Program-made: the position numbers and the translations under genes
Virus record (IMG/VR): IMGVR_UViG_3300040801_001224
Span: 1-64,000 of that record
Reading direction: 5' to 3' (one strand)
DNA: 64,000 bases
The notes under the pieces: generated by a model
Databases searched by the model: none
The model's input: only the letters and a program-made list of their open reading frames with translations
Told to the model about the DNA's origin: nothing
Part shown: one piece after another, positions 1 through 60,799 of the stretch
Numbering within the stretch: position 1 is the first letter of the stretch
Layout of the letters: each line of letters starts with the position of its first letter

Positions 1-34
1 AGGACAGTTTCCCGGCGTAGATGTACCATTTCTA

Positions 35-241
35 TTGATGATACACATAGATAAAGAACCTGCGCCATTTGCTCGTGTATACAAATACGTATTAACGGAT
101 CCAGTGACTCTAACTCTCACTCAGTGTGAAGATCAAGATCAACTAACTAAAGAAGAGCAGGTGTTTATAGCATTATCGTACGGTGATCTCAATAAGGTTG
201 ATGATGTAACAATCGATTATGAGATTAAATTGGAACTATGA
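35..241 (+). CDS. small hypothetical protein, C-terminal motif family A
   Basis: Motif EEQVFIALSYG; ATGA-coupled to the next gene. Confidence 0.7.
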   Translation: MMIHIDKEPAPFARVYKYVLTDPVTLTLTQCEDQDQLTKEEQVFIALSYGDLNKVDDVTIDYEIKLEL

Positions 242-405
242 TACACATTAATTTAGATAAACTGTATTGGCGTGAAGAGAACTACTTGTTGTGGGGTTCA
301 TTTGTTATTGCTGTTATGATGGATGGCGAACTGTTTTTCACCCATTCATATGGTTCACGATTAACTGACGAAGAAAGAGCATACATAAGGTTGAAATACC
401 TATGA
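238..405 (+). CDS. 55-aa hypothetical protein, family A (not in ORF track)
   Basis: Hand translation MIHINLDKLY...TDEERAYIRLKYL; ATGA overlaps on both sides. Confidence 0.75.
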   Translation: MIHINLDKLYWREENYLLWGSFVIAVMMDGELFFTHSYGSRLTDEERAYIRLKYL

Positions 406-632
406 TAGACATAGACGACACAAACACAGATTGGGCACTCATAGCAAAGCAACATTACTATATGAAAGGTGATGGCGTTATGGGATATCACCGTGTACAA
501 GGACCATTGTTATCTGAAACCGGACGGCCACTGTGGTATTGGCAGGGTAACCAGTATTCATTTGAACATTGGTGTATATTGTGCGGCCATAGTGATGAAG
601 AAGCAATGCTATTACGGATGAAATACTTGTGA
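402..632 (+). CDS. hypothetical protein, family A
   Basis: Ends SDEEAMLLRMKYL. Confidence 0.8.
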   Translation: MIDIDDTNTDWALIAKQHYYMKGDGVMGYHRVQGPLLSETGRPLWYWQGNQYSFEHWCILCGHSDEEAMLLRMKYL

Positions 633-820
633 TCAACGAAAGCAAATACGAATATATTGGTGCCTACCAAGATAAGTTAACACTCCAGGAAGGTGTTATA
701 CTTGAACACAACAATGGCGGGTGGTACGAAGTAATCATCCGGTATTGGACTGAAGAGTCAACTAAAAAAATGCCAATCGATCCAGAAACAGATCTATATC
801 TGAGGATGAAATACTTATGA
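629..820 (+). CDS. hypothetical protein, family A
   Basis: Ends ETDLYLRMKYL; GTGA overlap. Confidence 0.75.
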   Translation: MINESKYEYIGAYQDKLTLQEGVILEHNNGGWYEVIIRYWTEESTKKMPIDPETDLYLRMKYL

Positions 821-1038
821 TACGAATAAGGCCCAAATACGCAAAGGCAAACAAGACAATTACATTACAGGAATATAGGCATTACGTAAATACCATCACC
901 CAAATAAACAGTCTTGAATATGCTTGGGTAGAGGATAGCAATAGAACTATGGGTATAATCGAAATTGAATTTGACTGTGAAGACGATGCGGCCTTTTTCC
1001 TACTGTCATTTGACTTATCAGAGTTTAACGTGCTATGA
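817..1038 (+). CDS. hypothetical protein, family A
   Basis: FDCEDDAAFFLLSF; ATGA overlap. Confidence 0.8.
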   Translation: MIRIRPKYAKANKTITLQEYRHYVNTITQINSLEYAWVEDSNRTMGIIEIEFDCEDDAAFFLLSFDLSEFNVL

Positions 1039-1226
1039 GTATTGAGCTTATGGATTTAATCGACTTGGACGACATAGTACTTGAACTGAATGTATTCTGG
1101 TGGGGGTTAAACATGGTGGGTTATAAATCCCGGTCCGGTGAATGGCTATGGGATGATGTACTTGAAGAAGAAGACCGCTTATACCTACTCATAAAGCATG
1201 GGGAGGTTAGCCATGTTAGTGATTAA
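1035..1226 (+). CDS. hypothetical protein, family A
   Basis: EEEDRLYLLIKHG. Confidence 0.75.
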   Translation: MSIELMDLIDLDDIVLELNVFWWGLNMVGYKSRSGEWLWDDVLEEEDRLYLLIKHGEVSHVSD

Positions 1227-1422
1227 TATAGCACCCGACTTCATACGCATACCTATACTTGCGGCATTTGAACGTGAAGGAATAGAGTACGAATTTGTAG
1301 ACACCGCACACATAATGGTTGATGGTGAGGACGAACTAATGTTTAAGATGAAGTTTGATAAATCTAGCATATTCTATGCGGCTATTGTTCCCAGGACTAA
1401 CACAAAGTATTACGAAATATGA
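1213..1422 (+). CDS. hypothetical protein, family A
   Basis: EDELMFKMKF; start moved to the ATG after SD GGAGG. Confidence 0.75.
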   Translation: MLVINIAPDFIRIPILAAFEREGIEYEFVDTAHIMVDGEDELMFKMKFDKSSIFYAAIVPRTNTKYYEI

Positions 1423-1643
1423 TTAGAATTACGTGTAACAAACCAGGTGAAAAAGTATTATTTACCCGGGAACTAAAAAATAAGAATATCAATTATGGTA
1501 GGGGTGCCATATTTGATGCGTGGGGTACCATATTTGATACGTTCACGATAGCAAGAGATAGAGACATTTTCCTCTTTAAAATGACTTATGGAAGCGTGAG
1601 TGACTTCAAGCAAATGTGTAGGACTAATCATGAAAGAGAATGA
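1419..1643 (+). CDS. hypothetical protein, family A
   Basis: DRDIFLFKMTYG. Confidence 0.75.
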   Translation: MIRITCNKPGEKVLFTRELKNKNINYGRGAIFDAWGTIFDTFTIARDRDIFLFKMTYGSVSDFKQMCRTNHERE

Positions 1644-1893
1644 ACAAATATTTATAGAACGGAACCTTAAACGGATATTCGATGCCAACATACAGATACT
1701 GAGAACTCAGCACGATCCTGATAACGTATCCTTTATGCTGGATAGCCAGGATCAATTTAGACTACTCTTAACATTTGGGGATAAGGACACACTCGACCAA
1801 GCTATCGCTAAAGCAATAGTGAGCTTGGCTCTCACCTACGATTTATTTGAGGATCCACAACGAGTACTTGACCAAGTAGGATATTCAGTATGA
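1630..1893 (+). CDS. hypothetical protein, family A
   Basis: DSQDQFRLLLTFG; start at MKENEQ after AGGA. Confidence 0.75.
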   Translation: MKENEQIFIERNLKRIFDANIQILRTQHDPDNVSFMLDSQDQFRLLLTFGDKDTLDQAIAKAIVSLALTYDLFEDPQRVLDQVGYSV

Positions 1894-2138
1894 CAGACGA
1901 AGAATTCATGTATAAACTACTCATGGGATTAACCATTGAAGACATACCAGAACTTGTTATACGGGGGTACATCACTGAAGTGAACACCACACCTATACTT
2001 CAAGGCAAGGACAATTTACAGGTATGCCACTCCCTTAAAGAATTCATGCTTGAGGGAAAACACATACAAGAAGACGAAACCATCGCTTGGGTTGGTGATG
2101 ATCTCATACTTGATTTCGGTCAATTTGGAGACCACTAA
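1890..2138 (+). CDS. hypothetical protein, family A motif at N-terminus
   Basis: Starts MTDEEFMYKLLMG. Confidence 0.7.
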   Translation: MTDEEFMYKLLMGLTIEDIPELVIRGYITEVNTTPILQGKDNLQVCHSLKEFMLEGKHIQEDETIAWVGDDLILDFGQFGDH

Positions 2139-2338
2139 TGGACATCGTTATAGTAACCGATCACGCACCCATAGCTGAACTGTATTTTGAGGAGAGATCC
2201 ATTGAATACACAAAATGCCCACACGATCAATTCCCCTTAACCCTATACACTGTCCAGGGAGAGAACAGCCTTGCCTGGATACTTGCTGGCGGACCAGAAG
2301 AACTATACCAACGACTGGGGTATAATAGACGTGACTAA
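2138..2338 (+). CDS. hypothetical protein, family A
   Basis: ENSLAWILAGG; SD GGAG; TAATG overlap. Confidence 0.75.
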   Translation: MDIVIVTDHAPIAELYFEERSIEYTKCPHDQFPLTLYTVQGENSLAWILAGGPEELYQRLGYNRRD

Positions 2339-2540
2339 GAATCAATACGTGAGTGAACGACTCAGCGAATACTTTGACGTACACATAGATCTAGAAGAAC
2401 CCAATTTTGGCATAACTGATGAAGACCTATTCATACTTAAATTAAACTCAACCAGTGATGAATTCCTGGAACGTTATAGACTATACACGAACGAATATTT
2501 TGATACACACGGGGGCATAAGCCAATGGCTAGGACACTAA
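2331..2540 (+). CDS. hypothetical protein, family A
   Basis: TDEDLFILKLN; probable GTG start overlapping the previous gene. Confidence 0.65.
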   Translation: MTKNQYVSERLSEYFDVHIDLEEPNFGITDEDLFILKLNSTSDEFLERYRLYTNEYFDTHGGISQWLGH

Positions 2541-2541
2541 T

Positions 2542-2570
2542 TTGACACAACCACTTTTCCACTGTATAAT
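2542..2570 (+). promoter_or_regulatory. sigma70-type promoter giving a probably leaderless mRNA
   Basis: TTGACA-N17-TATAAT; ATG 6 nt after the -10 box. Confidence 0.85.
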
Positions 2571-2576
2571 ATAAGT

Positions 2577-2825
2577 ATGGATATTCCCGTACTCAATCTA
2601 TTTGAAATAAACTATGAAATAGCTGATAAGACGAAAGAAGACAGCTTAATTAAAACTGATCAAGCAGAACTATTCACTGGTATACTTGATCTAGAAGAAC
2701 AGTTGAATGGCAGAAGATATGCTCCCGTAGTTAATGGACGTATAGTAACAAAGGAAGTCTTAATAGAACATTTAAATCTCTCAGACGAAGACTTATTCAA
2801 GTATAGACTGGAAGGACTCTTATGA
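2577..2825 (+). CDS. hypothetical protein, family A
   Basis: Ends SDEDLFKYRLEGLL. Confidence 0.8.
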   Translation: MDIPVLNLFEINYEIADKTKEDSLIKTDQAELFTGILDLEEQLNGRRYAPVVNGRIVTKEVLIEHLNLSDEDLFKYRLEGLL

Positions 2826-3100
2826 AGTTCATATACGTGATAAGAGATACAGATATAAGTAAAGTCAATAACTTATTAGAAGAAGAACTGGGCCATATCC
2901 CATCGTACGAACGTTCCCCATATGATGAAGGTCAAATGTATATGCCATCCATATATAAAGTTACGTATATACTCGGGGAAGAAGAAGAACTATATCTAAG
3001 ACTTAGGTGGGGAAATATCAGTAACTTTGGCCCATATATAACATTTATGATGAGAAAGAACAGTATATATGCTTATGATAAACATAAATTCATTAAATGA
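2822..3100 (+). CDS. hypothetical protein, family A
   Basis: EEEELYLRLRWG. Confidence 0.8.
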   Translation: MKFIYVIRDTDISKVNNLLEEELGHIPSYERSPYDEGQMYMPSIYKVTYILGEEEELYLRLRWGNISNFGPYITFMMRKNSIYAYDKHKFIK

Positions 3101-3187
3101 TATCTATATAATGGGCAGAATCATTAGAAAATATCTTAACGATGCGATACTGGTAAAAATGGGCATGGCTCGGCTGGGGAGAAAAAG

Positions 3188-3412
3188 TTGAAAAAACTAT
3201 ATGTGACTGCGTCAGATCTAGAGTTAGCCGAGCTCTATCTATATAAGAATAACCTTGAATACGTGGTGGTAGAAGTTAAACCAATAGTAGCCGAGTCAAG
3301 AGTTCCCATATATGAAATAAACCTATTAGAAGATGAAGACGCAATGATGTTCGAAATACTCGGGGGAGAACCTGAGTTCAGAGACAATCTAATCAAATGG
3401 TGGGAATCATGA
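3188..3412 (+). CDS. hypothetical protein, family A
   Basis: EDEDAMMFEILGG; TTG start after GGGGAG. Confidence 0.75.
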   Translation: MKKLYVTASDLELAELYLYKNNLEYVVVEVKPIVAESRVPIYEINLLEDEDAMMFEILGGEPEFRDNLIKWWES

Positions 3413-3618
3413 GAGGAATTAAAGTTAAAGAGTGTAGATGCCCTGCCGCTGTAGAATATCTAAGAGATCACCTGGGTATAGAGTTCACTATACGATCTAG
3501 CGATGAATTCATTGATGAGTCTATAATAATAATTAAGGACCAACGTGATGAACTCATATGGCAATTAGCCGGGGGGATCGAAAGTATGGAAAGCTATATA
3601 TGGGAGAATGCTAAATGA
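3409..3618 (+). CDS. hypothetical protein, family A
   Basis: RDELIWQLAGG; ATGA overlap. Confidence 0.75.
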   Translation: MRGIKVKECRCPAAVEYLRDHLGIEFTIRSSDEFIDESIIIIKDQRDELIWQLAGGIESMESYIWENAK

Positions 3619-3857
3619 AGACATTCTATTGTGCGTATACCGACATCCCATATATAAGTAAGTTCTTCACTGATCGTGATATAGGATTCACGTACACAGA
3701 GCTTGATCACAGTTATGAGATCCAATTAACTGATGAAGAGTTCTTCTTATTGCGGATACATGGTGGTTGGGAAGCCGTAATAGACTATACTATAGAAGCC
3801 CGTAAACATAACGATCTAATCCGATCCACAATACCCAGAGTTACCACCACCAAATGA
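3615..3857 (+). CDS. hypothetical protein, family A
   Basis: TDEEFFLLRIHGG. Confidence 0.8.
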   Translation: MKTFYCAYTDIPYISKFFTDRDIGFTYTELDHSYEIQLTDEEFFLLRIHGGWEAVIDYTIEARKHNDLIRSTIPRVTTTK

Positions 3858-3992
3858 CCATAGCAGTACCGCCTGTTCATGGTTTAGTGATCGTGGGGTA
3901 ACTTCCTTATAGATAATCCACATGATCAGTTGTCTATTAGAAGATCAATACTATAGAGACTTTAATATACTGAGTCATGTATAAATACTTAT

Positions 3993-4259
3993 GTGACGGA
4001 ATCTTTTATAATACACAGTGGCAACATAGAGCTCATTCGAATAGCTGTTCACCGGGTATTGTCTGATTATGCCGTTGATTCCATAAACCTAGATCCAATC
4101 AGTGTCCCCCATCATTATAGTCGCACTCGAGTCACCGTATTGTTTAGTGATGCTGAATGCCACTTAGCTTATCGTATACGTTGGGATGATGCCAGTATAG
4201 CTACCCATACACAGAGTGTTATGTACCGTATGGTGTCTCAGAAGTATAACCTAGATTGA
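3993..4259 (+). CDS. hypothetical protein, family A
   Basis: FSDAECHLAYRIRW; GTG 5 nt after TATAAATA. Confidence 0.65.
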   Translation: MTESFIIHSGNIELIRIAVHRVLSDYAVDSINLDPISVPHHYSRTRVTVLFSDAECHLAYRIRWDDASIATHTQSVMYRMVSQKYNLD

Positions 4260-4358
4260 TTCACCTACCTGGATTAGCCAATCGGATTCACCTAGATGGA
4301 TCGTTCAGTCAGGTCATTTCGCTGGAATGAATCAGATGGATGGGCCAGTCGGTCAGTC

Positions 4359-4388
4359 TATCCTGTGGGATTATCCTGTGGGATTATC
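4359..4388. repeat. 13-bp tandem repeat TATCCTGTGGGAT x2 plus a partial copy
   Basis: Copies at 4359-4371 and 4372-4384, partial at 4385-4388. Confidence 0.8.
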
Positions 4389-4391
4389 TTA

Positions 4392-4420
4392 TTGACAAAA
4401 AAATTTGGTTGTGTTATAAT
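4392..4420 (+). promoter_or_regulatory. sigma70-type promoter, probably leaderless
   Basis: TTGACA-N17-TATAAT; ATG at 4427. Confidence 0.85.
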
Positions 4421-4426
4421 GTCTTT

Positions 4427-4768
4427 ATGGATGATTCAAATAAATTAATTTATGAGATAGATAATTTACAATGGTCGCCGTATGGATCCATACGACCTAT
4501 TGGTCATGATGGCGATTATAATAATAAGCGTTATGTATTCAATGGTGTTCGTCATATTATACGGGAAGTATTTAGTGAGCAAGGTTATGAAGTTGGTGAA
4601 ATCATTATACGGGAAATTGATACGAGTTTTAAGACCCAGTTCATAATATACCTGGAGAGTGCCGAAGACCAGTTTGCTTGGATCATGACAGATACTGATG
4701 TCATTAGTGAAAGAATAGATGATGAAGTCGAATCTTTTCTTGACATGATGGCCCTAAAGAGTATATAA
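4427..4768 (+). CDS. hypothetical protein, family A
   Basis: LESAEDQFAWIMT; the track start at 4340 runs through the promoter. Confidence 0.75.
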   Translation: MDDSNKLIYEIDNLQWSPYGSIRPIGHDGDYNNKRYVFNGVRHIIREVFSEQGYEVGEIIIREIDTSFKTQFIIYLESAEDQFAWIMTDTDVISERIDDEVESFLDMMALKSI

Positions 4769-4775
4769 TATACTT

Positions 4776-4856
4776 GTTCAGTTGTTTTTAAATTGAACTC
4801 CTTTTTTATTGGAACGAATTTTACCCCCAGTGTGAAAATGCCGGGGGTATTTTTTT
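4776..4856 (+). ncRNA. candidate sRNA 1 (hairpin, anti-SD CTCCTT, terminator)
   Basis: TTGACA 4740 / TATAAT 4764; stem GTTCAGTT/AATTGAAC; no ORF; intrinsic terminator. Confidence 0.55.
4822..4856 (+). terminator. intrinsic terminator
   Basis: TACCCCC...GGGGGTA followed by T7. Confidence 0.85.
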
Positions 4857-5011
4857 CAAGGACTTAGGGTCATTACTTATGTAATACTTTCAAGGACTTA
4901 GGCTCGTTGGAAACTCTATTAAAATCAAGGGCTTAGGCTCATCTCTTTCTTCAATGAAATCAAGGGTTTAGGTTCACAGTTACCTCAGAATAAAATCAAG
5001 GGTTTAGGGTC
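4852..5011. repeat. array of five ~20-bp repeats (core TCAAGGRYTTAGGNTC) with unique 14-16 bp spacers
   Basis: Cores start at 4856, 4890, 4925, 4960, 4996; partial inverted copy at 5037-5044. Confidence 0.9.
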
Positions 5012-5151
5012 GGTACCAGGAATGGTTCCTTAAAGTGAGCCTAAGTTGTACCGGTCCGTCGGAGTTCCGGTCTAGATCATTCAGGCAACCGGGGTGTTTG
5101 TCTCGTCCCACCCCCCGGGACCTCCTCAGCGTTATTCCTAACTATACCACT

Positions 5152-5180
5152 ATTATAGCGAATTGGCTGGTCAATGTCAA
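5152..5180 (-). promoter_or_regulatory. reverse-strand sigma70 promoter pointing into the repeat array
   Basis: Minus strand TTGACA-N17-TATAAT followed by AGTGGTATAGTTAGGAA. Confidence 0.85.
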
Positions 5181-5276
5181 GAAAAGATATAAAAAGATAT
5201 GTCTAGATATGCCTGGACCATAATAGTAATTCTGGTTTTCCAATGATAAATAAAAGTACAGGGGGGGATATATAGT

Positions 5277-5450
5277 ATGTTAACTGGTCCGAATGGAGTC
5301 AAGTATAATATTAGATTTGAAGATGAGACCAGTGATGTAATACTGATATTACCCAATCACTCTGGTAAGAATACCGAGTTGAGATTTAACAGTGTCCGTG
5401 ATGTATTGGATTTCATTGGGCAGAAGAGCATAGCACAAAGAACAGCATAA
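5277..5450 (+). CDS. 57-aa hypothetical protein (not in ORF track), paralogue of the next gene
   Basis: MLTGPNGVKY...FNSVRDVLDFIGQKS; GATAAATA at 5245 and G-rich SD. Confidence 0.7.
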   Translation: MLTGPNGVKYNIRFEDETSDVILILPNHSGKNTELRFNSVRDVLDFIGQKSIAQRTA

Positions 5451-5466
5451 ACACACCGGGGGATAT

Positions 5467-5652
5467 ATGTTTCGCACAAAGCAAGGTTTACCATACGAAT
5501 TAGAGTTTGAATCTAACAACAACATAACTCTAGTACTATACAGACCAAATGGCAGGGCCGCTCGCGTTACACACTTCAAATCAATTCCAGACGTTCTAGA
5601 TTTCCTGGGTGAGGAAAGTCTAAACGAAGTATCTTTAGACCAAGTATCATAG
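5467..5652 (+). CDS. hypothetical protein
   Basis: FKSIPDVLDFLGEES shared with the upstream paralogue. Confidence 0.7.
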   Translation: MFRTKQGLPYELEFESNNNITLVLYRPNGRAARVTHFKSIPDVLDFLGEESLNEVSLDQVS

Positions 5653-5867
5653 AAGACCTTCTTTTGAGGGTTAAGGATTTAAGGGTATACATAGGTATGC
5701 CTTTATTGTATAACGATTATCACTAAAATCCGTAAAATATTATACTGAAATAGGGCAGTTTCATAGTATAATATTAATCAAATCACATGTTTTTAATCAA
5801 TTTGTTTTAAGAAAAGGGTGTTTTTTAGCACAAAATATTGACGTGTCAGAAAAGAGTCATTTAAGGG

Positions 5868-6302
5868 TCATTTAATAATGAACTTAGGGCGTTTAGATTT
5901 CTCTCCAGGCGCCCGTATGTAATACTTATCGGGACGTTTTCCATATGTTTCGGTAAGCTTAGGACGGTCTTTAACTACAGTATTCTGTATATAGTCTTTA
6001 GATAATAAAACTTTCTCCATTATAACTGAGCCATACTTACCACCGGTCTTTAAGTTATATGTGTCTGGACGCAACACATAGTATTCGTCTACATAATACT
6101 CTTCACGCTCTTCAGCAGTTTCCCGATCAGTAAATACTTCTAGTATACGTTTAATAAAATATGGTCTATCATTGTTATAAGCCCATGTAACAAATGTCCC
6201 GCTACCCATATAGTCATCATTCTCTGGGTCTACTGCTGAGCGGACGCCGATGTATTCCATGTTTGTTTTAGTGTTTATTAGTTTATAAATATAATGTTTC
6301 AT
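5868..6302 (-). CDS. GIY-YIG (Seg-like) homing endonuclease
   Basis: HYIYKLIN...EYIGVR...YMGSG...YNLKTGG; start MKHYIYK. Confidence 0.85.
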   Translation of the reverse strand: MKHYIYKLINTKTNMEYIGVRSAVDPENDDYMGSGTFVTWAYNNDRPYFIKRILEVFTDRETAEEREEYYVDEYYVLRPDTYNLKTGGKYGSVIMEKVLLSKDYIQNTVVKDRPKLTETYGKRPDKYYIRAPGEKSKRPKFIIK

Positions 6303-6380
6303 AATAATACTTATCATATGTACGATCAGTTATGTAGAGTGAACGGTTGACTTCCGGTCTACCATTTGCTATAATGTGTT

Positions 6381-6671
6381 ATGGATCTAAAAGAAGAAAA
6401 CTTTAGTATATACGTTGCGCTAGTAAGCTTTACCCTATCTCTGGGTGCTATCGTGTGGCTTCACTGGTGGGTTGGCATTGTGACATTCATCTGTTGTGTG
6501 ATTGGCTTTGCCATATTCGTAGACCGTTACTACACTAAAGAGATTAAGATTATATCCCCATTCCCAGTTAAGCTTGAAGGCCAGTGGCGATTTGTGTTCT
6601 ACGTTATACGTGGTAGCTATATGGTAACACCCGAGCGGCTATTGATGGATAAAATTAAAAATAGTGGTTGA
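6381..6671 (+). CDS. membrane protein
   Basis: Two hydrophobic segments; TTGACT-N17-TATAAT ends 5 nt before the ATG. Confidence 0.75.
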   Translation: MDLKEENFSIYVALVSFTLSLGAIVWLHWWVGIVTFICCVIGFAIFVDRYYTKEIKIISPFPVKLEGQWRFVFYVIRGSYMVTPERLLMDKIKNSG

Positions 6672-6720
6672 CATCCACTATTAATGTTGTTATACTTCTG
6701 GAAATAGTTAGGAGAAACAC

Positions 6721-7005
6721 ATGAAATATTTTGCAGAGTTCTATAGGGCACCATTAAAATCATATCCACAGCGTAACCCAGAGACTGGCCGTTACGAAGT
6801 TATGCCTAATCCCGACCCAGAGTTGCCAGTACCAGTGTGTGGTACTAATGGCCATTTAATACTGGACGGTCGCAAGAGCAAGTATAGCCACATGTCACAG
6901 GCTCGTGCCGTTGCTGAAGCCAATGGTTGGGTGGCATATCAGATTGTGAAGGGTGAAACGTTTACCCGCAACACTCAGGCAGTCACACCAGTAATGTACA
7001 TTTAA
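6721..7005 (+). CDS. early hypothetical protein
   Basis: Own promoter and AGGAG SD. Confidence 0.85.
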   Translation: MKYFAEFYRAPLKSYPQRNPETGRYEVMPNPDPELPVPVCGTNGHLILDGRKSKYSHMSQARAVAEANGWVAYQIVKGETFTRNTQAVTPVMYI

Positions 7006-7069
7006 AAATAGTGGTTGACACGACCACTTCTTGATAGTATAATGGTTCTAAACAGTTAGGAGAACAATT

Positions 7070-7435
7070 ATGTTAGTATTTACAGAAAGCCCAGGTTTAA
7101 CTACAGACGGTACTGGTTTTTGGAGTACATCTGAACTTACAGTAACAGTAGAAAAGTTAGACCTATCCTCAAATATTAAACGTGACTTTGGTGAGTTGCG
7201 TGTTATATTTGACACTGATACTTGGGACGTACAGATGGAAGGTCTCATTTATACAGACAAAGGTTTTATGACCGAGCTTAAAGCGTTACTGGAAGCCAAT
7301 GGTTTAGACGCCAGTGATATTGGTTACAGTGAACAAGGTATGCAGGGCGAGAACTATGTTAGCCTGGATGTTGGTGAGAACTTTATTGGCTCATGGTTGG
7401 ATCGTGGCATTGACTTTGAGGAGTACAACTTCTAA
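7070..7435 (+). CDS. early hypothetical protein
   Basis: Own promoter and SD; LIYTD and YSEQGMQG segments. Confidence 0.85.
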   Translation: MLVFTESPGLTTDGTGFWSTSELTVTVEKLDLSSNIKRDFGELRVIFDTDTWDVQMEGLIYTDKGFMTELKALLEANGLDASDIGYSEQGMQGENYVSLDVGENFIGSWLDRGIDFEEYNF

Positions 7436-7668
7436 TGTTACAGTTATTTGCTGAACAACTTAACGCGGTTTACCTAGTAACAGGTAGGCCGCTCATTACA
7501 TTCCCCTTGAACGACGAGCAGTCTTACCTAATGGCTCTGGAGTTACGTAGAGCTCAACAAGGATTAACTGCCCAGGTTAGACAGTTTGGGGTTAATGAAG
7601 ACATGATAGAGCTTGCTGAGTTCTATCAGAACGTTTACGAAGAACTCGTGGAGTTAACTAATGAATAA
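7435..7668 (+). CDS. hypothetical protein
   Basis: TAATG coupling. Confidence 0.75.
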   Translation: MLQLFAEQLNAVYLVTGRPLITFPLNDEQSYLMALELRRAQQGLTAQVRQFGVNEDMIELAEFYQNVYEELVELTNE

Positions 7669-7762
7669 CAGAAAGAACTTTAAGGACGCATTGGTCATTG
7701 GCGTCATTGTTGTATTGGCGTTCACTTACTTTGGTGACATCTTTGCTACGGTGGTTATATGA
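7661..7762 (+). CDS. 33-aa membrane peptide (not in ORF track)
   Basis: SD GGAG; MNNRKNFKDALVIGVIVVLAF... Confidence 0.6.
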   Translation: MNNRKNFKDALVIGVIVVLAFTYFGDIFATVVI

Positions 7763-7929
7763 AGCCCGGCATGTTGTTTGTTGCCAGCTTAATGTTAATG
7801 TTCTGGCTGGGATTGGGCCTAGCCATTGCTATGCTGTTTGTGATTAACATCTTTGTTGGCCTAGCCATAGCACTTGGTTTAGGTATAGTAGCGGCATTTA
7901 TTTTATATTATATCGGACAAAGTGGTTGA
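7759..7929 (+). CDS. 56-aa membrane protein (not in ORF track)
   Basis: ATGA overlap; two hydrophobic helices; stop lies inside the next -35 box. Confidence 0.65.
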   Translation: MKPGMLFVASLMLMFWLGLGLAIAMLFVINIFVGLAIALGLGIVAAFILYYIGQSG

Positions 7930-7990
7930 CATAGTGGTCTGACTTTGTTATAATACGTCTATACTTAGTTAATAATGTACAGAGGTTATT

Positions 7991-8323
7991 ATGCAGGTCA
8001 CAAGAGATTGGATGATTAACTACATTGAGACTCGGGATCAAGCGCAAGTTAACCAGATGGTTGGTAGAGCATTAGTTCAAATATTTAAACGACAGACTGA
8101 TCACGAGCAGAGAGTTAACGACACTAATGTCTGGAATGACATTGGCTTCAGCGCAAGTGACGCATACTCTGGCAGTATCTGTGCTAAGACATTCATGAAG
8201 CGTGGTGCTCTAATTGACTTCCAGTTGGAGAAATGGTTAAAGCCCACACAACATGGCTACCCACGTATCACTAAATATTGGAAACAATTAAACGAAATCG
8301 CACAGAATAAAAAGAGTGGTTGA
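7991..8323 (+). CDS. early hypothetical protein
   Basis: Own promoter; SD GAGG. Confidence 0.85.
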   Translation: MQVTRDWMINYIETRDQAQVNQMVGRALVQIFKRQTDHEQRVNDTNVWNDIGFSASDAYSGSICAKTFMKRGALIDFQLEKWLKPTQHGYPRITKYWKQLNEIAQNKKSG

Positions 8324-24087: not shown

Positions 24088-24292
24088 TTGCTTTTGGATT
24101 AGGTTATACTGGGTATTGGTATGGGTCTTAAAGATCCTACTGAACGCTGGATGTTCTTATTGTCCGGTTGTTTGTTTGTGGTCGCTGGAGTGGTGTTGTG
24201 AGAAAAGGCCTACATCTGGGGCTCTTCAGCCTCCGGGTTTGGTTTCAATCGGCGCTGAAGTCAGGGTCAGAAAGTGGTCCGGGGTATTGGTG

Positions 24293-24628
24293 ATGGATTT
24301 ATTGTTTGGATGGTTAATGGCAGTTAGCGTGGCGTATTTACATGTTGATCTGGTGGTGGCTCGTTGGTGGGAACGTTCTTCTCAGTATTGGCACAGTACT
24401 GGCGAACCAAAGTTTACTATGTCGGAAAAAGCTGGTTTCTGTTTTACCCTGCTGGTTGCGTTCTGTATTGTGTTCTTTATTTCAGCGGCAATGGCGCACC
24501 TAGCGTTAGACAGAGGCTTATTTGGTCTGGGAGCTCTAGCCATAATCGTATTGTCACTAGTGTTGTTACGTCAACGAATCATTAACGTTAGTGGTGAACT
24601 TGAATTTAAAAAGAAGTTGGAGAGTTAA
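24293..24628 (+). CDS. 3-TM membrane protein, family B
   Basis: Start MDLLFGW; ends LEFKKKLES. Confidence 0.75.
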   Translation: MDLLFGWLMAVSVAYLHVDLVVARWWERSSQYWHSTGEPKFTMSEKAGFCFTLLVAFCIVFFISAAMAHLALDRGLFGLGALAIIVLSLVLLRQRIINVSGELEFKKKLES

Positions 24629-24982
24629 ATGGAAGATCTAATATTCAAATACGTTATAGTGGGAATCTATCTAACCTATGTTTTCCTCATTGCTTTTTTC
24701 TGGGAACGCATACGTAACGACAAAGACCTAACTATCGGCAATATATTGGATAGTGGTAAGACTTCGGATATACTGGGGATGGCCATGTTAACATTATTCG
24801 TGGTCTTACCTATTACCACTTTAATGACTGCAATTTTCGTTATGTTAGTATTTATAATAACCATTGAGCTGATTCAGATGCCATCGTGGCTGTGGGTGCC
24901 AGTTATATTGACACTAATCGCAGTGGGCCGCATTGTTTTGTTTGAACGAGTACAAAAATTTAGAAACAAATTGGAGAGTTAA
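24629..24982 (+). CDS. 3-TM membrane protein, family B
   Basis: Ends QKFRNKLES. Confidence 0.8.
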   Translation: MEDLIFKYVIVGIYLTYVFLIAFFWERIRNDKDLTIGNILDSGKTSDILGMAMLTLFVVLPITTLMTAIFVMLVFIITIELIQMPSWLWVPVILTLIAVGRIVLFERVQKFRNKLES

Positions 24983-25186
24983 ATGACTAGATTTGAAGCA
25001 TATTATATTGGGGCTTGTGTGCCAGTATTCATCGTATTCCTACTATCGATCCTATCGGGTATCCCAGGTTGGAATATATGGATGACATTTGGTGTATGGG
25101 TTATAATGTTAGCATCAGTTGGTTACTGGGTTAAGGCAAAGGACGAAGCTGGTGAGCCAATTATAACGGAGAAAGACGATGATTAA
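24983..25186 (+). CDS. small membrane protein
   Basis: Two TM segments. Confidence 0.75.
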   Translation: MTRFEAYYIGACVPVFIVFLLSILSGIPGWNIWMTFGVWVIMLASVGYWVKAKDEAGEPIITEKDDD

Positions 25187-25550
25187 GCAAGTCATAATGT
25201 ATTTTGTTATTAATAGTGTGTTCCTATACTGTACTGTTATGGGGTTAGCTTACGATGTTGAAGGTGCGCTAAACATAAGTCTGTTTATTGCGTGGGCTAT
25301 TTCCCTCCTATCACTTGTGTTTTTGAGTGAAGAGTTTCAGAAGAAAGTATTCGAGGAACAGCCAAAGTCAGCTGTGCCAGCATGGTTCGATACGTGCTTT
25401 GATTTGGTTATTATCGGCATGTTTGTGTGGTATGGTGCCATTTTCACAGCAATCGCATACAGCATTCATTTAATACTTGTGATTGGGTACCGTAAAAATC
25501 GTGAAGACTATTTCTTAAAGAAATTAAAAGGCGAAGAGGTTGAAGTGTAA
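25179..25550 (+). CDS. membrane protein, family B-like
   Basis: DYFLKKLKG near the C-terminus. Confidence 0.8.
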   Translation: MIKQVIMYFVINSVFLYCTVMGLAYDVEGALNISLFIAWAISLLSLVFLSEEFQKKVFEEQPKSAVPAWFDTCFDLVIIGMFVWYGAIFTAIAYSIHLILVIGYRKNREDYFLKKLKGEEVEV

Positions 25551-25864
25551 TGTATTACTTGATGTTACTTATGCTATTGTGGGTGTTTCTCATGTTTGCG
25601 TGGGCACATTCCGTTTACCCACGTTTAATCGAATGGGATTCAGATGCTGACCAACTCGGCGGCTTCTGGCCAACCGTGCTCGTATCTCTCGTGAATTGTA
25701 TAATAGCAATGGTCTTATTCCTTGTTGTCTCTAAGTGGATATGGAGTATAAATTCCATGGTGCTAGTGGGTACAGTAGTTTTCTTGTTTGGATTTGGTAT
25801 GACACTCAGGATAACCGGACATCATAAACAGCTAAATAGAACTATGGAGACTTTAAAGTCATGA
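25550..25864 (+). CDS. 3-TM membrane protein, family B
   Basis: Ends NRTMETLKS. Confidence 0.8.
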   Translation: MYYLMLLMLLWVFLMFAWAHSVYPRLIEWDSDADQLGGFWPTVLVSLVNCIIAMVLFLVVSKWIWSINSMVLVGTVVFLFGFGMTLRITGHHKQLNRTMETLKS

Positions 25865-25952
25865 AACTTAAAGATGTTATTACTGGAATCGTAATGCTCA
25901 TAGCGTTGGGTGTTGCCCTATACTATATGGCATGGGAGTCGGGTTTAATCTA

Positions 25953-26147
25953 ATGCCTTACGTACCAGAGCTTGACGAATACCTACATGTTATCGAATCG
26001 CCCAAACGTTCTGATAAACTAAAGGCGAGAGAACTTGTTGCGGCTGGTAAGGCACTTGGATACAGCGTTCATCATACCGGTGATGGACATCTAGACATAT
26101 GGTTCGACAGTGAAGAAGATGCCCTGAGGTATATGCTTGTATGGTAG
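25953..26147 (+). CDS. hypothetical protein, family A
   Basis: Ends WFDSEEDALRYMLVW. Confidence 0.75.
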   Translation: MPYVPELDEYLHVIESPKRSDKLKARELVAAGKALGYSVHHTGDGHLDIWFDSEEDALRYMLVW

Positions 26148-26536
26148 ATGAAAATGTAACACTAATACACAGTGACGATTATTGTGTGATAATGCAGAGT
26201 AATGATCCACGTGAACAGTACTTGGGTAATCCCGTACAGCTCATGGAGCAGGTATGGTGCAATCAACCCAATGACTGTAATGAGTATCGCACAAACCTGC
26301 GTTCAGAACATTATGGCAAGCGTGTGTTCTATGTGTATTGTATGTCCGATCAGATCGTGGAATTTAAAGTTGTTGACTTAGCCGTAAAAGACAGAGCGTA
26401 TGATCCAAATGACATAAGATGTAGCCACCCGTTATTGGTTGATGGCGGTATTGTGATGACGCCACTAAAGAACAAACATGAGATTTTGGAATATGTTTTA
26501 TTTGATGAACTAGTTGGAAAAAGAGATGAAGAGTGA
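26141..26536 (+). CDS. hypothetical protein
   Basis: SD GAGG; overlap coupling. Confidence 0.75.
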   Translation: MVDENVTLIHSDDYCVIMQSNDPREQYLGNPVQLMEQVWCNQPNDCNEYRTNLRSEHYGKRVFYVYCMSDQIVEFKVVDLAVKDRAYDPNDIRCSHPLLVDGGIVMTPLKNKHEILEYVLFDELVGKRDEE

Positions 26537-26650
26537 AGAAATTATTTACAGGTTATTGATTGGCGGTATGCTAATACTGTTGATGCTGAGTATCGATCCA
26601 GTGATGTCACTGCTCAGTGGCATCGGCTTATACATTATGGGAACGCTGAG

Positions 26651-27055
26651 TTGATAGCAATTATTAATCCAGAATACACTGGTAGATTTTCAGGCAGAGT
26701 AATCGGCTATGTTTGTCGTGTGAGTGAACGAGCTCACTGGCCTGAGGAAGAACAGTGGGATGGACAAGGTGCTCCATACGCAGGTATGATCTACATAAAG
26801 TTCGGAGTCAAGGGTGAGGAAATCATGGAGGATCGTCTAGTGAATGGTGACGACTCTATGTATACTGGACACGCCACTGACAGCGATGTGGGCGGCCTAA
26901 TACGTGAGTTTGTGGAAGATTATCTGGATCGGGATAGGCGATTACTCAGTTTTCGTCAGGTTCCCGGCTGTAGAATCAAAGGCCAACTATATTATAGAAC
27001 TAGCGTAGAAGCAGACAAATACCGGGGAATCCCCTGCCTAATGTATGGACGATAA
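26651..27055 (+). CDS. hypothetical protein, start uncertain
   Basis: The frame is open from 26537. Confidence 0.6.
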   Translation: MIAIINPEYTGRFSGRVIGYVCRVSERAHWPEEEQWDGQGAPYAGMIYIKFGVKGEEIMEDRLVNGDDSMYTGHATDSDVGGLIREFVEDYLDRDRRLLSFRQVPGCRIKGQLYYRTSVEADKYRGIPCLMYGR

Positions 27056-27132
27056 ATAATACTAGAGGTACACACATATGAAAATAAAATTCCACCCAAT
27101 TTACATAGGCCCAATCCCACCTGGAAAATAAC

Positions 27133-27540
27133 ATGGACAAGAAAGATCGCACTATTGAAGAGATTAAGGGTCATTACGACAATGGCCAGTTAGCTGAACA
27201 CTACTTTGCTGACATACAGCACGACCAATATTTTGGAAAGTTTAGGCGTTGGTATAAAGACGGCACACCACAATGTGACTGTGAGTTTAACGATGACAAT
27301 CGACTAGTAGGGATTGCCAGGTGGTGGTGGCCCAACGGACAATTACAGATGATCAGTGAGAGTGTTGGTGGCGGTGATTGTGGCTTCTTTGCGGAATTCG
27401 AACAAGACGGCACACTTGTAGAAGCAGATTATACTACTGAATCGGAAACATATGACATTCAAAAAGAAGTGGAAGCTGTTGGGTCTGATGGAATTACTGA
27501 CGAATTTATAATGATGTTGAGGTTAAAGTATTACGAATGA
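27133..27540 (+). CDS. MORN-variant (YwqK-like) repeat protein with family A tail
   Basis: HYDNGQL, WYKDGTP, WWPNGQL repeats; ends TDEFIMMLRLKYYE. Confidence 0.8.
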   Translation: MDKKDRTIEEIKGHYDNGQLAEHYFADIQHDQYFGKFRRWYKDGTPQCDCEFNDDNRLVGIARWWWPNGQLQMISESVGGGDCGFFAEFEQDGTLVEADYTTESETYDIQKEVEAVGSDGITDEFIMMLRLKYYE

Positions 27541-27731
27541 GTTATTACCGTAGGGTTCACGTTAAAAACAAATATAAGATAGACCCGAACATTGCTAACT
27601 TCATGTTTGAGAGTTGGTTAGTTAATAACAATATAGGTTTTGAGAAGTTCAAAATTATAGACCTCAACACCGTTGACGTCTGGTTTCGCAGTAAGCAAGA
27701 TTATTTTATATACGAAATGCTTAAGCCTTAG
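27537..27731 (+). CDS. hypothetical protein, family A
   Basis: WFRSKQDYFIYEML. Confidence 0.7.
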   Translation: MSYYRRVHVKNKYKIDPNIANFMFESWLVNNNIGFEKFKIIDLNTVDVWFRSKQDYFIYEMLKP

Positions 27732-28473: not shown

Positions 28474-28505
28474 ACCCATATTTATGCCAGTAGGTAAATA
28501 ATACT

Positions 28506-29333: not shown

Positions 29334-29414
29334 CAAGACCACTTTTTTATTATATAATAATGATAGTTAGAAACTATGACTAACTATTCTTTTAACCTTA
29401 ATTGGAGAGGACCA

Positions 29415-59839: not shown

Positions 59840-60173
59840 TTGACAAGACCACATTATATCCAGTATAATAGTGTTATGTTTACATATAGCGGCATTGTTG
59901 TTCCAGATCTTTATGAAATAGAAAAGCGTTTGCTGGATAATGGATTAGTTTTTCAGGAAGGAAATACCTTCCATTGCTTCTCTGAGTATCTGGATGAAGA
60001 TAGATTTGCCATGATCCTAAAAGATAAAAAGCCAGTATTGTTTGAAAACGAGTCTGCTATTATAAGAGCATTGGGCGGGCATTCGGACAGGCCAGTCTAC
60101 AGCATATCTGTAAAAAACTTTCAGATAATAGCTGAAGAAGTAGGTTGACAAGACCACTTATAATTGCTATAAT
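59840..60173 (+). promoter_or_regulatory. two early-type promoters inside the late module
   Basis: TTGACAAGACCAC..TATAAT at 59840-59869 and 60145-60173. Confidence 0.85.
59876..60148 (+). CDS. hypothetical protein (family A-like motif)
   Basis: ATG 6 nt after TATAAT; DEDRFAMILK. Confidence 0.7.
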   Translation: MFTYSGIVVPDLYEIEKRLLDNGLVFQEGNTFHCFSEYLDEDRFAMILKDKKPVLFENESAIIRALGGHSDRPVYSISVKNFQIIAEEVG

Positions 60174-60770: not shown

Positions 60771-60799
60771 GAAAGGGACTTTTTAGTCCCTTTTCTTTT
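60771..60799. terminator. terminator between convergent units
   Basis: AAAGGGACT-TTTT-AGTCCCTTT followed by T-rich sequence. Confidence 0.8.

What the first reader, a model, noticed from the sequence alone, without database searches (positions are those of the whole stretch)
35..4768. Array of ~19 small proteins with unrelated N-termini but a shared acidic-hydrophobic C-terminal tag
Seen: translationally coupled 55-113 aa ORFs carry a motif like [DE][DE][DE]-x-hydrophobic(3-4)-[KRL]-[LMI]-x-[YWFG]: DEERAYIRLKYL, DEEAMLLRMKYL, ETDLYLRMKYL, EDDAAFFLLSF, EEDRLYLLIKHG, EDELMFKMKF, DEDLFILKLN, EEELYLRLRWG, DEEFFLLRIHGG. One ORF (1890) has it at the N-terminus, and it recurs at 25953, 27133, 27537 and 59876. 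Inference: a common docking or oligomerisation helix presents a diversified library of effector domains, for example anti-defence or host-interaction proteins, on one partner or scaffold.
Basis: partly seen in the sequence, partly recalled or inferred. Interest (0 to 1): 0.7.

Follow-up and report, generated by a model that had tools for sequence, protein, structure and literature searches.

The report
Expanded small-protein family of huge phages
The array is a tandem expansion of an undescribed family of tiny early phage proteins whose shared "tag" is the last strand and helix of their compact fold, and the same family has 37-64 six-frame matches in each of five other huge phages, so it is a major unexplored part of huge-phage genomes rather than a detachable docking peptide.

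Summary
The motif is real and far beyond chance. The array runs across the artificial ends of a circularly assembled 328-kb phage genome, from about 319 kb to 4.8 kb. It consists of translationally coupled genes fed by perfect sigma-70 consensus promoters, so the genes are probably early.

The N-termini are not unrelated. There are two full-length subfamilies: A (strand-helix-strand-strand-helix, ACT-like shape) and B (three-strand meander plus C-terminal helix). One MORN-repeat protein also carries the motif. AlphaFold places the motif helix inside each compact fold at pLDDT about 95, so it is structural core and not a free tag.

Subfamily A is homologous (hhalign probability 95.7%) to small proteins ending in ...DAxxFKLxWG. 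These give 37-64 six-frame matches in each of five other huge phages, including cultured Sinorhizobium phage Phosso, and 4 in PA5oct. None has a Pfam or PHROG family, a paper that I could find, or a name other than "hypothetical protein".

Function is not shown. My inference is a diversified set of early cytoplasmic binders of host factors. A common docking partner is not excluded.

The parts
1..241 (+). 3' part of a gene that crosses the record ends (it starts a few dozen bases before the end of the 328,096-bp record). Weak copy of the unit at 143-181 (LTKEEQVFIALSY).
238..405 (+). Subfamily B-like gene, 55 aa. Motif 361-402 ends at the stop codon, with ATGA overlap to the next gene.
402..632 (+). 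Subfamily B-like gene, 76 aa. Motif 588-629 ends at the stop codon.
629..820 (+). Subfamily B gene, 63 aa (the modelled member). Motif 776-817. The last 45 nt are 89% identical to 327283-327327.
817..1038 (+). Gene of 73 aa, pairwise related to genes at 181.6, 307.8 and 322.0 kb. Motif 970-1014.
1035..1226 (+). Subfamily B-like gene, 63 aa. Motif 1161-1202.
1213..1422 (+). Subfamily A gene, 69 aa. Motif 1321-1359.
1419..1643 (+). Subfamily A gene, 74 aa, found by the profile and not among its seeds. Motif core 1569-1592.
1630..1893 (+). A-like gene (paralogue of 324010-324300). Internal motif 1738-1779.
1890..2138 (+). Gene of 82 aa with a weak (E 0.03-0.3) motif-like string at its N-terminus (1893-1928). 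The rest is unassigned.
2138..2338 (+). Subfamily A gene, 66 aa. Degenerate motif 2258-2293: hydrophobic pattern kept, charges lost.
2331..2540 (+). Gene with probable GTG start at 2331. Motif 2412-2444.
2542..2570 (+). Perfect TTGACA-17-TATAAT promoter-like site. The ATG at 2577 lies 6 nt after the -10 hexamer, which suggests a leaderless start.
2577..2825 (+). Gene of 82 aa. Motif 2778-2810 near the C-terminus.
2822..3100 (+). Subfamily A gene, 92 aa. Motif 2972-3013, followed by a 28-residue tail.
3188..3412 (+). Subfamily A gene, 74 aa. Motif about 3326-3367.
3409..3618 (+). Subfamily A gene, 69 aa. Degenerate motif about 3538-3576.
3615..3857 (+). Subfamily A gene, 80 aa (the modelled member). 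Motif 3726-3764 is helix 2 of a strand-helix-strand-strand-helix-helix fold.
3993..4259 (+). A-like gene, 88 aa. Motif about 4143-4187.
4392..4420 (+). Perfect sigma-70 consensus promoter-like site. The ATG at 4427 lies 6 nt after the -10 hexamer.
4427..4768 (+). Gene of 113 aa with an A-like domain in its second half. Unit about 4640-4693.
25932..26147 (+). Outlying A-type member, 71 aa. Motif about 26103-26144 at the C-terminus.
27133..27540 (+). MORN_2-repeat protein, 135 aa, that ends in the motif (about 27493-27537). This is a third N-terminal architecture.
27537..27731 (+). Outlying A-type member, 64 aa. Motif about 27684-27728.
59876..60148 (+). Outlying A-type member. It starts 6 nt after a perfect promoter-like site (59840-59869). 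Motif about 59990-60025.

Best explanation
The window holds the downstream third of a roughly 14-kb tandem array, from about 319.0 kb across the record junction to 4.8 kb. The array holds about 50-55 small genes of a 328-kb uncultured phage from a microbial mat, distantly related to PA5oct.

Most of these genes belong to one fast-diverging superfamily of 55-115-residue, mostly acidic proteins. Its hallmark is a C-terminal strand-plus-amphipathic-helix unit: phi-x-phi-x-F, then [STD]-E-E-D, then phi-phi-F-[KR]-[LM]-x-[YFW]-[GL].

The unit is the core of a tiny fold. It packs on a three-stranded sheet supplied by the N-terminal half. That half has diverged into at least two architectures:
- Subfamily A: strand-helix-strand-strand-helix, with an ACT-like or ferredoxin-like shape.
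- Subfamily B: a conserved N-terminal string followed by a three-strand meander and the helix.

Subfamily A is the local branch of a much wider undescribed family of large and huge phages, with consensus W-[CL]-x-x-N ... phi-x-F-x-F-x4-D-A-M-x-F-K-L-x-W-G at the C-terminus. Six-frame searches find tens of matches per genome.

Steps that are shown: the motif, the array, the two subfamilies, the homology to the wider family, the copy numbers, the consensus promoter-like sites and the overlapping gene junctions.

Steps that are inferred:
(a) The genes are transcribed early by host RNA polymerase.
(b) The helix is buried.
(c) The proteins are soluble cytoplasmic binders whose variable surfaces recognise different host factors (host take-over or counter-defence), with copy number and divergence driven by an arms race.
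For: Motif significance. Protein-level conservation with synonymous codon variety.

Continuity across the 23-bp assembly overlap, and coupled junctions.

Full-length subfamilies. Pairwise phmmer clusters found without any seed alignment.

AlphaFold models. Subfamily A: mean pLDDT 89.3, pTM 0.73, motif is helix 40-48 straight after strand 33-38. Subfamily B: mean pLDDT 92.0, pTM 0.76, motif is helix 52-62 after strand 41-47.

Profile comparisons. A against B shares only the motif (probability 74.6%, E 2.6e-5). A against external homologues aligns 44 columns spanning helix 1 to helix 2 (probability 95.7%, E 1e-8).

Wider family:
- The DNA pattern found at least 120 IMG/VR stretches. In 76 of 87 ORFs the motif ends 0-3 residues before the stop codon.
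- The subfamily-A HMM, built from this genome only, hits 64 ORFs there and 0 in shuffles. Of these, 29 lack the searched pattern.
- Six-frame matches at E <= 0.01: 56, 64, 37 and 53 in four 417-608-kb phages, 18 in a 125-kb fragment, 37 in Phosso, 4 in PA5oct, 1 in Atu_ph07 and 23 in this genome.

Early expression. There are 75 perfect TTGACA-N16-18-TATAAT sites on the + strand against 2 on the - strand and 0-1 in shuffles. Sites at 318964, 321535, 2542, 4392 and 4740 (12 of 12 matches) and one at about 325508 (11 of 12) feed the array. The relative PA5oct depends on host RNA polymerase and has similar promoters (PMC7318152).

Charge: median pI 5.1 for members against 6.0 for other small ORFs.

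Virion: the PA5oct homologues carry no virion mass-spectrometry flag in the record.
Against: No expression data exist for this phage; only DNA runs hold it.

The models are predictions from shallow alignments of paralogues (14 and 11 rows), and burial of the helix was not measured.

Subfamily B is linked to the wider family only through the motif, so convergence or transfer of a module is possible.

Conserved acidic and basic positions, and the near-invariable ending right after W-G, could also reflect a recognition function.

No fold or sequence match gives any function. The host-factor-binder role is therefore by analogy only.
Confidence: 0.6

Rival explanations
1. The strand-helix unit is a common docking or oligomerisation element. 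All members bind one shared partner or scaffold (phage or host) through it, and their variable parts are the cargo.
For: The unit sits on at least three N-terminal architectures, and A against B shares nothing else.

Charged positions are well conserved in this genome: E-E-D, and K/R at column 11 in 24 of 29.

In the wider family the protein ends 0-3 residues after W-G in 76 of 87 cases. Longer proteins of 336-573 aa also carry the unit near the C-terminus.
Against: Both models put the helix in the fold at pLDDT about 95 with no linker.

The N-terminal parts are too small to fold alone.

Degenerate members lose the charges and keep the hydrophobic pattern.

In the external alignment the nearly invariant residues are W, F, A, F and L, which are core-type, and the two solvent-facing helix positions vary freely.

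The Arg at column 11 is partly explained by an embedded Shine-Dalgarno-like AGG.

No partner is known.
Confidence: 0.2
2. The shared C-terminal unit was acquired more than once, by recombination between neighbouring genes or by convergence. On this view subfamilies A and B and the MORN protein are not one family, and the motif is a mobile C-terminal cap module.
For: A against B aligns only 21 columns, and B against the external family shows nothing.

Two B paralogues that are 49% identical overall share 89% DNA identity over their last 45 nt.

A MORN-repeat protein carries the motif.

A similar strand-helix string closes PH-like Ran-binding domains, which shows the pattern can arise independently (E 0.16, not significant).
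Against: Fast divergence of 60-residue proteins erases N-terminal similarity easily. A and B genes are interleaved in one array on one strand. No recombination breakpoint was shown.
Confidence: 0.12
3. The conservation is a nucleotide-level by-product: ribosome-binding sites and ATGA overlaps for translational coupling, or a repeated DNA element, rather than a protein motif.
For: In terminal copies column 11 is the rare codon AGG in 8 of 12, placing GAGG or AAGG 10-12 nt before the next ATG. The last codon is constrained to xxA before TGA.
Against: Seventeen of 29 strong copies are internal, 6-60 residues from the stop codon, and never use AGG there.

The conserved columns use many synonymous codons.

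BLASTN finds almost no DNA similarity between copies.

The motif is conserved as protein in unrelated genomes with other codon usage.
Confidence: 0.03

Closest known systems
Hyperplastic regions of T4-type phages, with their early small ORFs and PeSL promoter-stem-loop cassettes (PMC2839356, PMC4122927)
   Same: Both are runs of small, poorly conserved genes on one strand, driven by strong sigma-70-type early promoters in a T4-like-baseplate myovirus. The promoters of this genome also carry a stem (GTGG...CCAC) around the -35 hexamer.
   Different: Here most genes are paralogues of one superfamily rather than unrelated ORFans. Inside the array genes are coupled by overlaps and are not separated by cassettes. 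The family recurs in tens of copies in distant huge phages.
Host-takeover module of Bacillus phage SPO1 (24 small early genes in the terminal redundancy); from my own knowledge, not checked here
   Same: Both are a compact block of small genes with strong early promoters. In SPO1 the products shut down host functions.
   Different: As far as I know the SPO1 genes are not one paralogous family. No functional data exist for the present genes. No sequence relation was found.
ACT / ferredoxin-like small alpha-beta domains
   Same: The subfamily-A model has the strand-helix-strand-strand-helix order. The Atlas model of another subfamily-A member (L006:11773-11961) superposes on ACT-domain clusters with TM 0.65-0.76 by query.
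   Different: There is no significant Pfam ACT match. The final strand is absent, and there is no conserved ligand loop. All PDB and AFDB matches are at chance level (Z at most 6.2, Foldseek E at least 0.03).
C-terminal strand-helix cap of PH-like domains such as the Ran-binding domain of RanBP2
   Same: The local string is of the same type: phi-x-phi-x-F, a short acidic turn, then A-x-x-F-K-x-K-F. It was the best PDB profile hit.
   Different: E is 0.16, which is not significant. It covers about 20 residues only. PH domains have seven strands. This is an analogy of a supersecondary element, not membership.
Expanded multigene families of giant eukaryotic viruses (ankyrin, BTB, MORN and similar); from my own knowledge
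   Same: Both are tens of diverged copies of one small domain per genome, often in tandem, and presumed to be host-interaction proteins.
   Different: The hosts and domains differ. Here the whole protein is usually just the one 60-90-residue domain.

Membership tests
Any Pfam-A or PHROG family | Match to a curated profile at or near its threshold | tested here: not met
   The window members, own-genome paralogues and external homologues including those of PA5oct and Phosso were scanned. Nothing reached a curated cut-off, and no family recurred among the 30 members of alignment A4. Only the MORN_2 part of 27133-27540 matched.
Sigma-70 region 4.1 mimic (a T4 Srd-like decoy idea, suggested by the LRMRFG string of sigma-70) | Significant similarity to Sigma70_r4, or of the motif profile to RpoD region 4.1 | tested here: not met
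   No member has a Sigma70_r4 hit. The motif HMM scores E. coli RpoD 559-564 at -2.9 bits. The best of 2000 shuffles of RpoD scored up to 4.5 bits.
ACT domain | Strand-helix-strand-strand-helix-strand fold with a profile match | tested here: not met
   The shape is similar (TM up to 0.76 by query). There is only one weak ACT_AHAS_ss hit at E 0.22 among 30 members. The sixth element is absent from the model.
Glutaredoxin / thioredoxin fold | CxxC active site and a Glutaredoxin profile match | tested here: not met
   A tandem glutaredoxin (P0017) matched profile positions 10-45 only. Members have no CxxC and no Glutaredoxin hit. Fold searches did not return glutaredoxins.
Virion-packaged proteins with a targeting signal (as for T4 internal proteins) | Presence in virion proteome and late expression | tested here: inconclusive
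   The four PA5oct homologues (gp202, gp209, gp210, gp237) lack the ESI-MS/MS note that marks virion proteins in that record. The genes of this phage lie behind sigma-70 consensus promoter-like sites. There is no proteome for this phage.
Early host-takeover or hyperplastic-region gene block of large myoviruses | Small genes on one strand behind strong host-type early promoters | tested here: met
Early host-takeover or hyperplastic-region gene block of large myoviruses | Early transcription and an effect on the host, demonstrated | not testable with these tools
   Only DNA runs from a microbial-mat metagenome hold the sequence.
Self-associating (homodimeric) small protein | Supported homodimer interface | tested here: inconclusive
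   The complex job on two copies of 629-817 gave no verdict for or against.

The most novel reading that the evidence does not exclude
The strand-helix unit ending in F-K-L-x-W-G is a shared recognition element for one hub. The hub could be a host chaperone, a protease, RNA polymerase or a phage-encoded scaffold. On this reading the 20-60 copies per huge-phage genome form a combinatorial adaptor library that brings many different small surfaces to one machine. That would be a kind of phage system not described so far.
Probability: 0.15. Interest if true: 0.85.

Novelty: new variant of a known kind. Interest (0 to 1): 0.55.

Why it matters
Huge phages are mostly made of unannotated small genes. 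This work shows that a sizeable share of those genes belongs to one recognisable superfamily with a simple sequence signature: at least 40 ORFs in this genome and 37-64 six-frame matches in each of five other huge phages. A single profile would therefore annotate hundreds of "unique" ORFs. The family also offers a tractable model for how phages generate and diversify small early proteins. Two cultured phages carry it: Sinorhizobium phage Phosso (37 matches) and Pseudomonas phage PA5oct (4 matches, with an existing RNA-seq data set). Its function can therefore be tested directly. If the members turn out to be inhibitors of host factors or defences, the family is a large natural library of small protein binders.

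Tried and rejected
- Megablast of the array, and tblastn of two members, against 50,697 phage records found no match.
With 3615-3854 it found no relative in IMG/VR.
- A 23-column profile found nothing in PA5oct. The longer A4 profile later found four copies, so that blank was a sensitivity failure.
- Fold searches of both models in PDB, BFVD, AFDB clusters, the ESM Atlas and VIA-align wide gave only chance-level generic alpha-beta or OB/PH-like matches.
- The sigma-70 region 4.1 resemblance, a lead from memory, was rejected.
- Glutaredoxin and ACT membership were rejected.
- The long repetitive proteins P0007, P0014, P0018 and P0019 in the representative search are compositional false positives.
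- The homodimer prediction for the subfamily-B member scored 0.12 against a mark of 0.42. That is no answer either way and is not used as evidence.
- The tRNA and Rfam scans of 1-8000 were empty.
- Gene context in a 27-kb phage contig (methyltransferase, 5'-3' deoxyribonucleotidase, small ORFs) was uninformative.
- The literature gave no paper containing the motif strings, and nothing on such a family in the PA5oct or Sinorhizobium jumbo-phage papers. The PA5oct supplements are not held.
- No RNA run holds the phage.

Full report
WHERE THE WINDOW LIES. The window is bases 1-64000 of a 328,096-bp IMG/VR virus record classed as having direct terminal repeats. The repeat is only 23 bp and identical at both ends, so it is an assembly overlap of a circular or circularly permuted genome. 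Three DNA runs from one microbial-mat metagenome sample hold the sequence, and no listed holder is an RNA run. There is no near relative among 50,697 phage records. The 1275-residue baseplate wedge protein is 42% identical to that of Pseudomonas phage PA5oct and 37% to those of Salicola phage SCTP-2, Agrobacterium phage Atu_ph07 and Sinorhizobium phage Phosso. The phage is therefore a distant member of that group of jumbo myoviruses.

THE OBSERVATION. The recurrences at 25953, 27133, 27537 and 59876 are also real.

Five hundred shuffles of the array proteins give a mean of 0.022 and never more than 1. A 15-column profile iterated within the genome finds 40 ORFs at E <= 1, against 0-2 in five shuffled ORF sets.

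The signal is at protein level. The conserved Leu column is written with five Leu codons beside Met. Tyr, Asp, Glu and Lys each use both of their codons. BLASTN finds almost no DNA similarity between copies.

The consensus of 29 strong copies is F-[LI]-[DTS]-E-E-D-[AE]-[LM]-[YA]-F-[KR]-[LM]-[KT]-[YF]-[LGDN]. It is preceded by a strand-like phi-x-phi-x pattern.

THE ARRAY IS LARGER THAN THE FINDING. Joined across the record ends, the first 'ORF at 35' becomes the 3' part of a gene that starts before the end of the record. The run of + strand small genes is continuous from about 319.0 kb to 4.77 kb, and most junctions overlap by 1-8 nt, with ATGA the commonest. Further members lie at 296-309 kb, 179-182 kb and 196.6 kb, and in the window at 25932, 27133, 27537 and 59876.

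THE N-TERMINI ARE NOT UNRELATED. An all-against-all phmmer run with no prior alignment already groups the genes into clusters. Alignments show two full-length subfamilies.
- Subfamily A reads M-x-x-I..., then a helix ending L-x-x-x-G-I, two strands, and the motif.
- Subfamily B reads M-I-D-x-D-K-Y-D-Y-I-G, then strands with a conserved Trp, and the motif ending at the stop codon.

Profiles iterated in the genome include 19 (A) and 11 (B) ORFs at E <= 1e-3, against 0-4 hits at E <= 1 in shuffles. Seed sequences match by construction, but several genes were new finds: 1419-1643, 324010-324300 and a minus-strand copy at 325251-325472. In the window, seven genes match A at E 1e-15 to 1e-19 and four match B at E 2e-9 to 8e-22. 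The rest carry weaker copies of the unit.

Profile-profile comparison of A and B aligns only 21 columns around the motif (probability 74.6%, E 2.6e-5). One gene, 27133-27540, is a MORN_2-repeat protein that ends in the motif.

STRUCTURE. AlphaFold2 on the paralogue alignments gave confident single-domain models.
- For 3615-3854 (A): mean pLDDT 89.3, pTM 0.73, order E2-7, H8-20, E26-29, E33-38, H40-48 (the motif), H51-72.
- For 629-817 (B): mean pLDDT 92.0, pTM 0.76, order E9-11, E21-28, E31-38, E41-47, H52-62 (the motif).

In both models the motif helix follows the last strand without a linker, and its block pLDDT is 95-97. I could not read solvent exposure from the models. The sequence pattern does speak, though. 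On a helical wheel the residues A, M, F, L and W of D-A-M-x-F-K-L-x-W-G span an arc of about 200 degrees. The two freely variable positions fall on the remaining side (my reading). Degenerate members such as 2138-2338 and 3409-3618 keep the hydrophobic pattern and lose the charges. Conserved buried positions with variable exposed ones is the signature of a core element.

No fold search gave a meaningful neighbour. For A the best values were Foldseek E 0.03-0.3 and VIA Z 6.2, and the matches were generic KH, ACT, EF-G domain V or ring-building-motif shapes. The Atlas model of another A member (L006:11773-11961) superposed on ACT clusters with TM up to 0.76. For B the best Z was 3.6.

THE FAMILY IS NOT PRIVATE TO THIS GENOME. 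A profile of A against 1.84 billion representative proteins found only 26 hits. Most were the genome's own proteins. A few were small metagenomic proteins ending in ...E-D-A-x-L-F-K-L-x-W-G. Their contigs are large-phage fragments that carry several such genes each.

Many lay in contigs of 125-608 kb, and several hits fell in one contig. In 87 ORFs carrying the string, it ends 0-3 residues before the stop codon in 76, and the median length is 89 residues.

The A profile, built from this genome only, hits 64 ORFs in those loci at E <= 0.01 and none in shuffles. Of these, 29 lack the searched string and so are independent of the search. Several matches extend over helix 1 and strand 2, with strings of the type ...E-W-L-x-E-N-x-I-x-F...

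An alignment of 23 external proteins has the consensus W-[CL]-x-x-N ... F-x-F-x4-D-A-M-x-F-K-L-x-W. F is invariant, and W, F, A and L are nearly so. This alignment matches subfamily A with probability 95.7% and E 1e-8 over 44 columns, from helix 1 to helix 2. Subfamily B does not match it.

Six-frame searches with a mixed alignment gave these matches at E <= 0.01:
- 56, 64, 37 and 53 in four phage genomes of 417-608 kb;
- 18 in a 125-kb fragment;
- 23 in the window's own genome;
- 37 in cultured Sinorhizobium phage Phosso;
- 4 in PA5oct, 1 in Atu_ph07 and 0 in SCTP-2.

In Phosso the genes again stand in tandem, coupled runs. All are annotated 'hypothetical protein'.

None of these proteins matches Pfam or PHROGs. 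No held paper contains the motif strings, and the PA5oct and Sinorhizobium jumbo-phage papers do not mention such a family. A few longer proteins (573, at least 353 and 336 residues) carry the unit near the C-terminus, and their other parts have no known domain.

EXPRESSION CONTEXT. The genome has 75 perfect TTGACA-N16-18-TATAAT sites on the + strand and 2 on the - strand. Ten shuffles give 0-1. Sites at 318964, 321535, 2542, 4392 and 4740 (12 of 12 matches) and one at about 325508 (11 of 12) stand in the few gaps of the array. PA5oct is rifampicin-sensitive and uses similar -35 and -10 boxes (PMC7318152). Early transcription by host RNA polymerase is therefore a reasonable inference, but it is not shown. 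The PA5oct homologues lack the virion mass-spectrometry flag carried by structural genes of that record. That argues against a packaging signal.

AN OVERPRINT FROM TRANSLATIONAL COUPLING. Twelve genes have the motif ending at the stop codon with the next gene overlapping. In these, motif column 11 is Arg written AGG in eight. AGG makes up 8% of Arg codons in long genes of this genome. The codon creates GAGG or AAGG 10-12 nt before the next ATG. In seventeen internal copies the column is mostly Lys and never AGG. The last residue (Leu as TTA or CTA, Gly as GGA) is what an xxA-TGA overlap permits. The 'R-M-K-Y-L-stop' flavour seen at 238-820 is thus partly a nucleotide constraint laid over a protein motif. 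It cannot explain the motif as a whole.

WHAT IT MOST LIKELY IS AND DOES. Shown: this is a tandem expansion of a widespread, undescribed superfamily of tiny phage proteins, defined by a C-terminal strand-helix unit. Inferred: the unit is the folding core, the genes are early, and the products are soluble, mostly acidic cytoplasmic proteins (median pI 5.1). I further infer that their diverged surfaces bind different host factors, by analogy with the small early inhibitors of T4, T7 and SPO1. I put about 0.6 on this overall picture, more on the structural part and less on the functional part.

It is favoured by the sharing of the unit across architectures and by the strict C-terminal position. 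It is disfavoured by the models and by the conservation pattern. Independent acquisition of the unit by subfamily B and the MORN protein is a third possibility, at about 0.12.

LEADS THAT FAILED.
- The resemblance of the motif to sigma-70 region 4.1 (LRMRFG) does not hold. The motif profile scores RpoD at -2.9 bits, below many shuffles, and no member matches Sigma70_r4.
- A tandem glutaredoxin and several repetitive proteins in the representative search are partial or compositional matches.
- The best PDB profile hit is the last strand and helix of Ran-binding domains at E 0.16. That is an analogy of a supersecondary element only.
- A homodimer prediction gave no verdict.

VERDICT. The kind of thing, blocks of small early genes in large myoviruses, is known. 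This superfamily, its signature and its scale in huge phages appear to be undescribed.

Noticed in passing
Window 2542, 4392, 4740, 7015, 7926, 8588, 10053, 11325, 12216, 12935, 13366, 13920, 15346, 16069, 17866, 18872, 19840, 20358, 21568, 23389, 29330, 59840, 60145 (start of each -35 hexamer, + strand): The genome has 75 perfect TTGACA-N16-18-TATAAT sites on the + strand against 2 on the - strand, and 0-1 in shuffles. Many share an extended consensus in which GTGG before the -35 hexamer pairs with CCAC after it. This recalls the PeSL promoter-stem-loop cassettes of T4-type phages (PMC2839356, PMC4122927). It explains a spurious 'family' of short minus-strand ORFs at 6.6-19 kb.
   Followed up: partly
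Window 2577, 4427, 59876; also about 321570, 139.7, 177.6, 178.3, 189.1, 255.7, 269.4, 277.7 and 296.2 kb of the genome: In one class of these promoter-like sites the ATG follows the -10 hexamer by only 5-7 nt, which would give leaderless mRNAs. In another class (7-22 kb) a conserved leader AAACAGTTAGGAG precedes the start codon.
   Followed up: no
Window 361-402, 588-629, 776-817 and the matching 3' ends at 326.2-327.8 kb: The rare Arg codon AGG (8% of Arg codons) occupies motif column 11 in 8 of 12 genes whose motif ends at the stop codon. It gives a Shine-Dalgarno-like GAGG or AAGG 10-12 nt before the overlapping start of the next gene. It is never used in 17 internal copies.
   Followed up: partly
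Window 1-23 and genome 328074-328096: The 'direct terminal repeat' of the record is a 23-bp exact overlap. A gene reads through the junction, so the record is a circular assembly cut inside a gene.
   Followed up: yes
Window 5277-5450 and 5467-5652 (+): Two adjacent ORFs of 57 and 61 residues are paralogues of each other and unrelated to the motif family. Pfam gave nothing for the first.
   Followed up: no
Window 5868-6317 (-): A lone minus-strand ORF of 149 residues sits between + strand early genes. Its N-terminus looks GIY-YIG-like by eye, but Pfam gave no hit at E <= 0.01.
   Followed up: partly
Window 24116-25864 (+): Five consecutive small ORFs with very hydrophobic sequences, probably membrane proteins, lie just upstream of the outlying family members at 25932-27731.
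   Followed up: no
Window 27721-28479 (-) and 29376-30587 (+): A cytidylyltransferase fused to a mannose-6-phosphate-isomerase-type cupin, and a PKD plus polysaccharide-lyase-14 protein that may be a depolymerase.
   Followed up: no
Window 31442-63904 (-): A minus-strand structural module. It includes a 2918-residue ORF (46823-55579), a baseplate wedge protein 42% identical to that of PA5oct (55584-59414), a baseplate hub/lysozyme-like protein (60783-62420) and a tail fibre or spike-like protein (43924-45426). No consensus promoter-like site lies between 29330 and 59840.
   Followed up: partly
Genome 87.9-93.4 kb (- strand), outside the window: Twelve short ORFs related to one another in a row, probably a DNA repeat region or another small gene family. 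Not examined.
   Followed up: no
Genome 325251-325472 (- strand), outside the window: One subfamily-A member is inverted relative to the rest of the array, in a gap between + strand genes.
   Followed up: no
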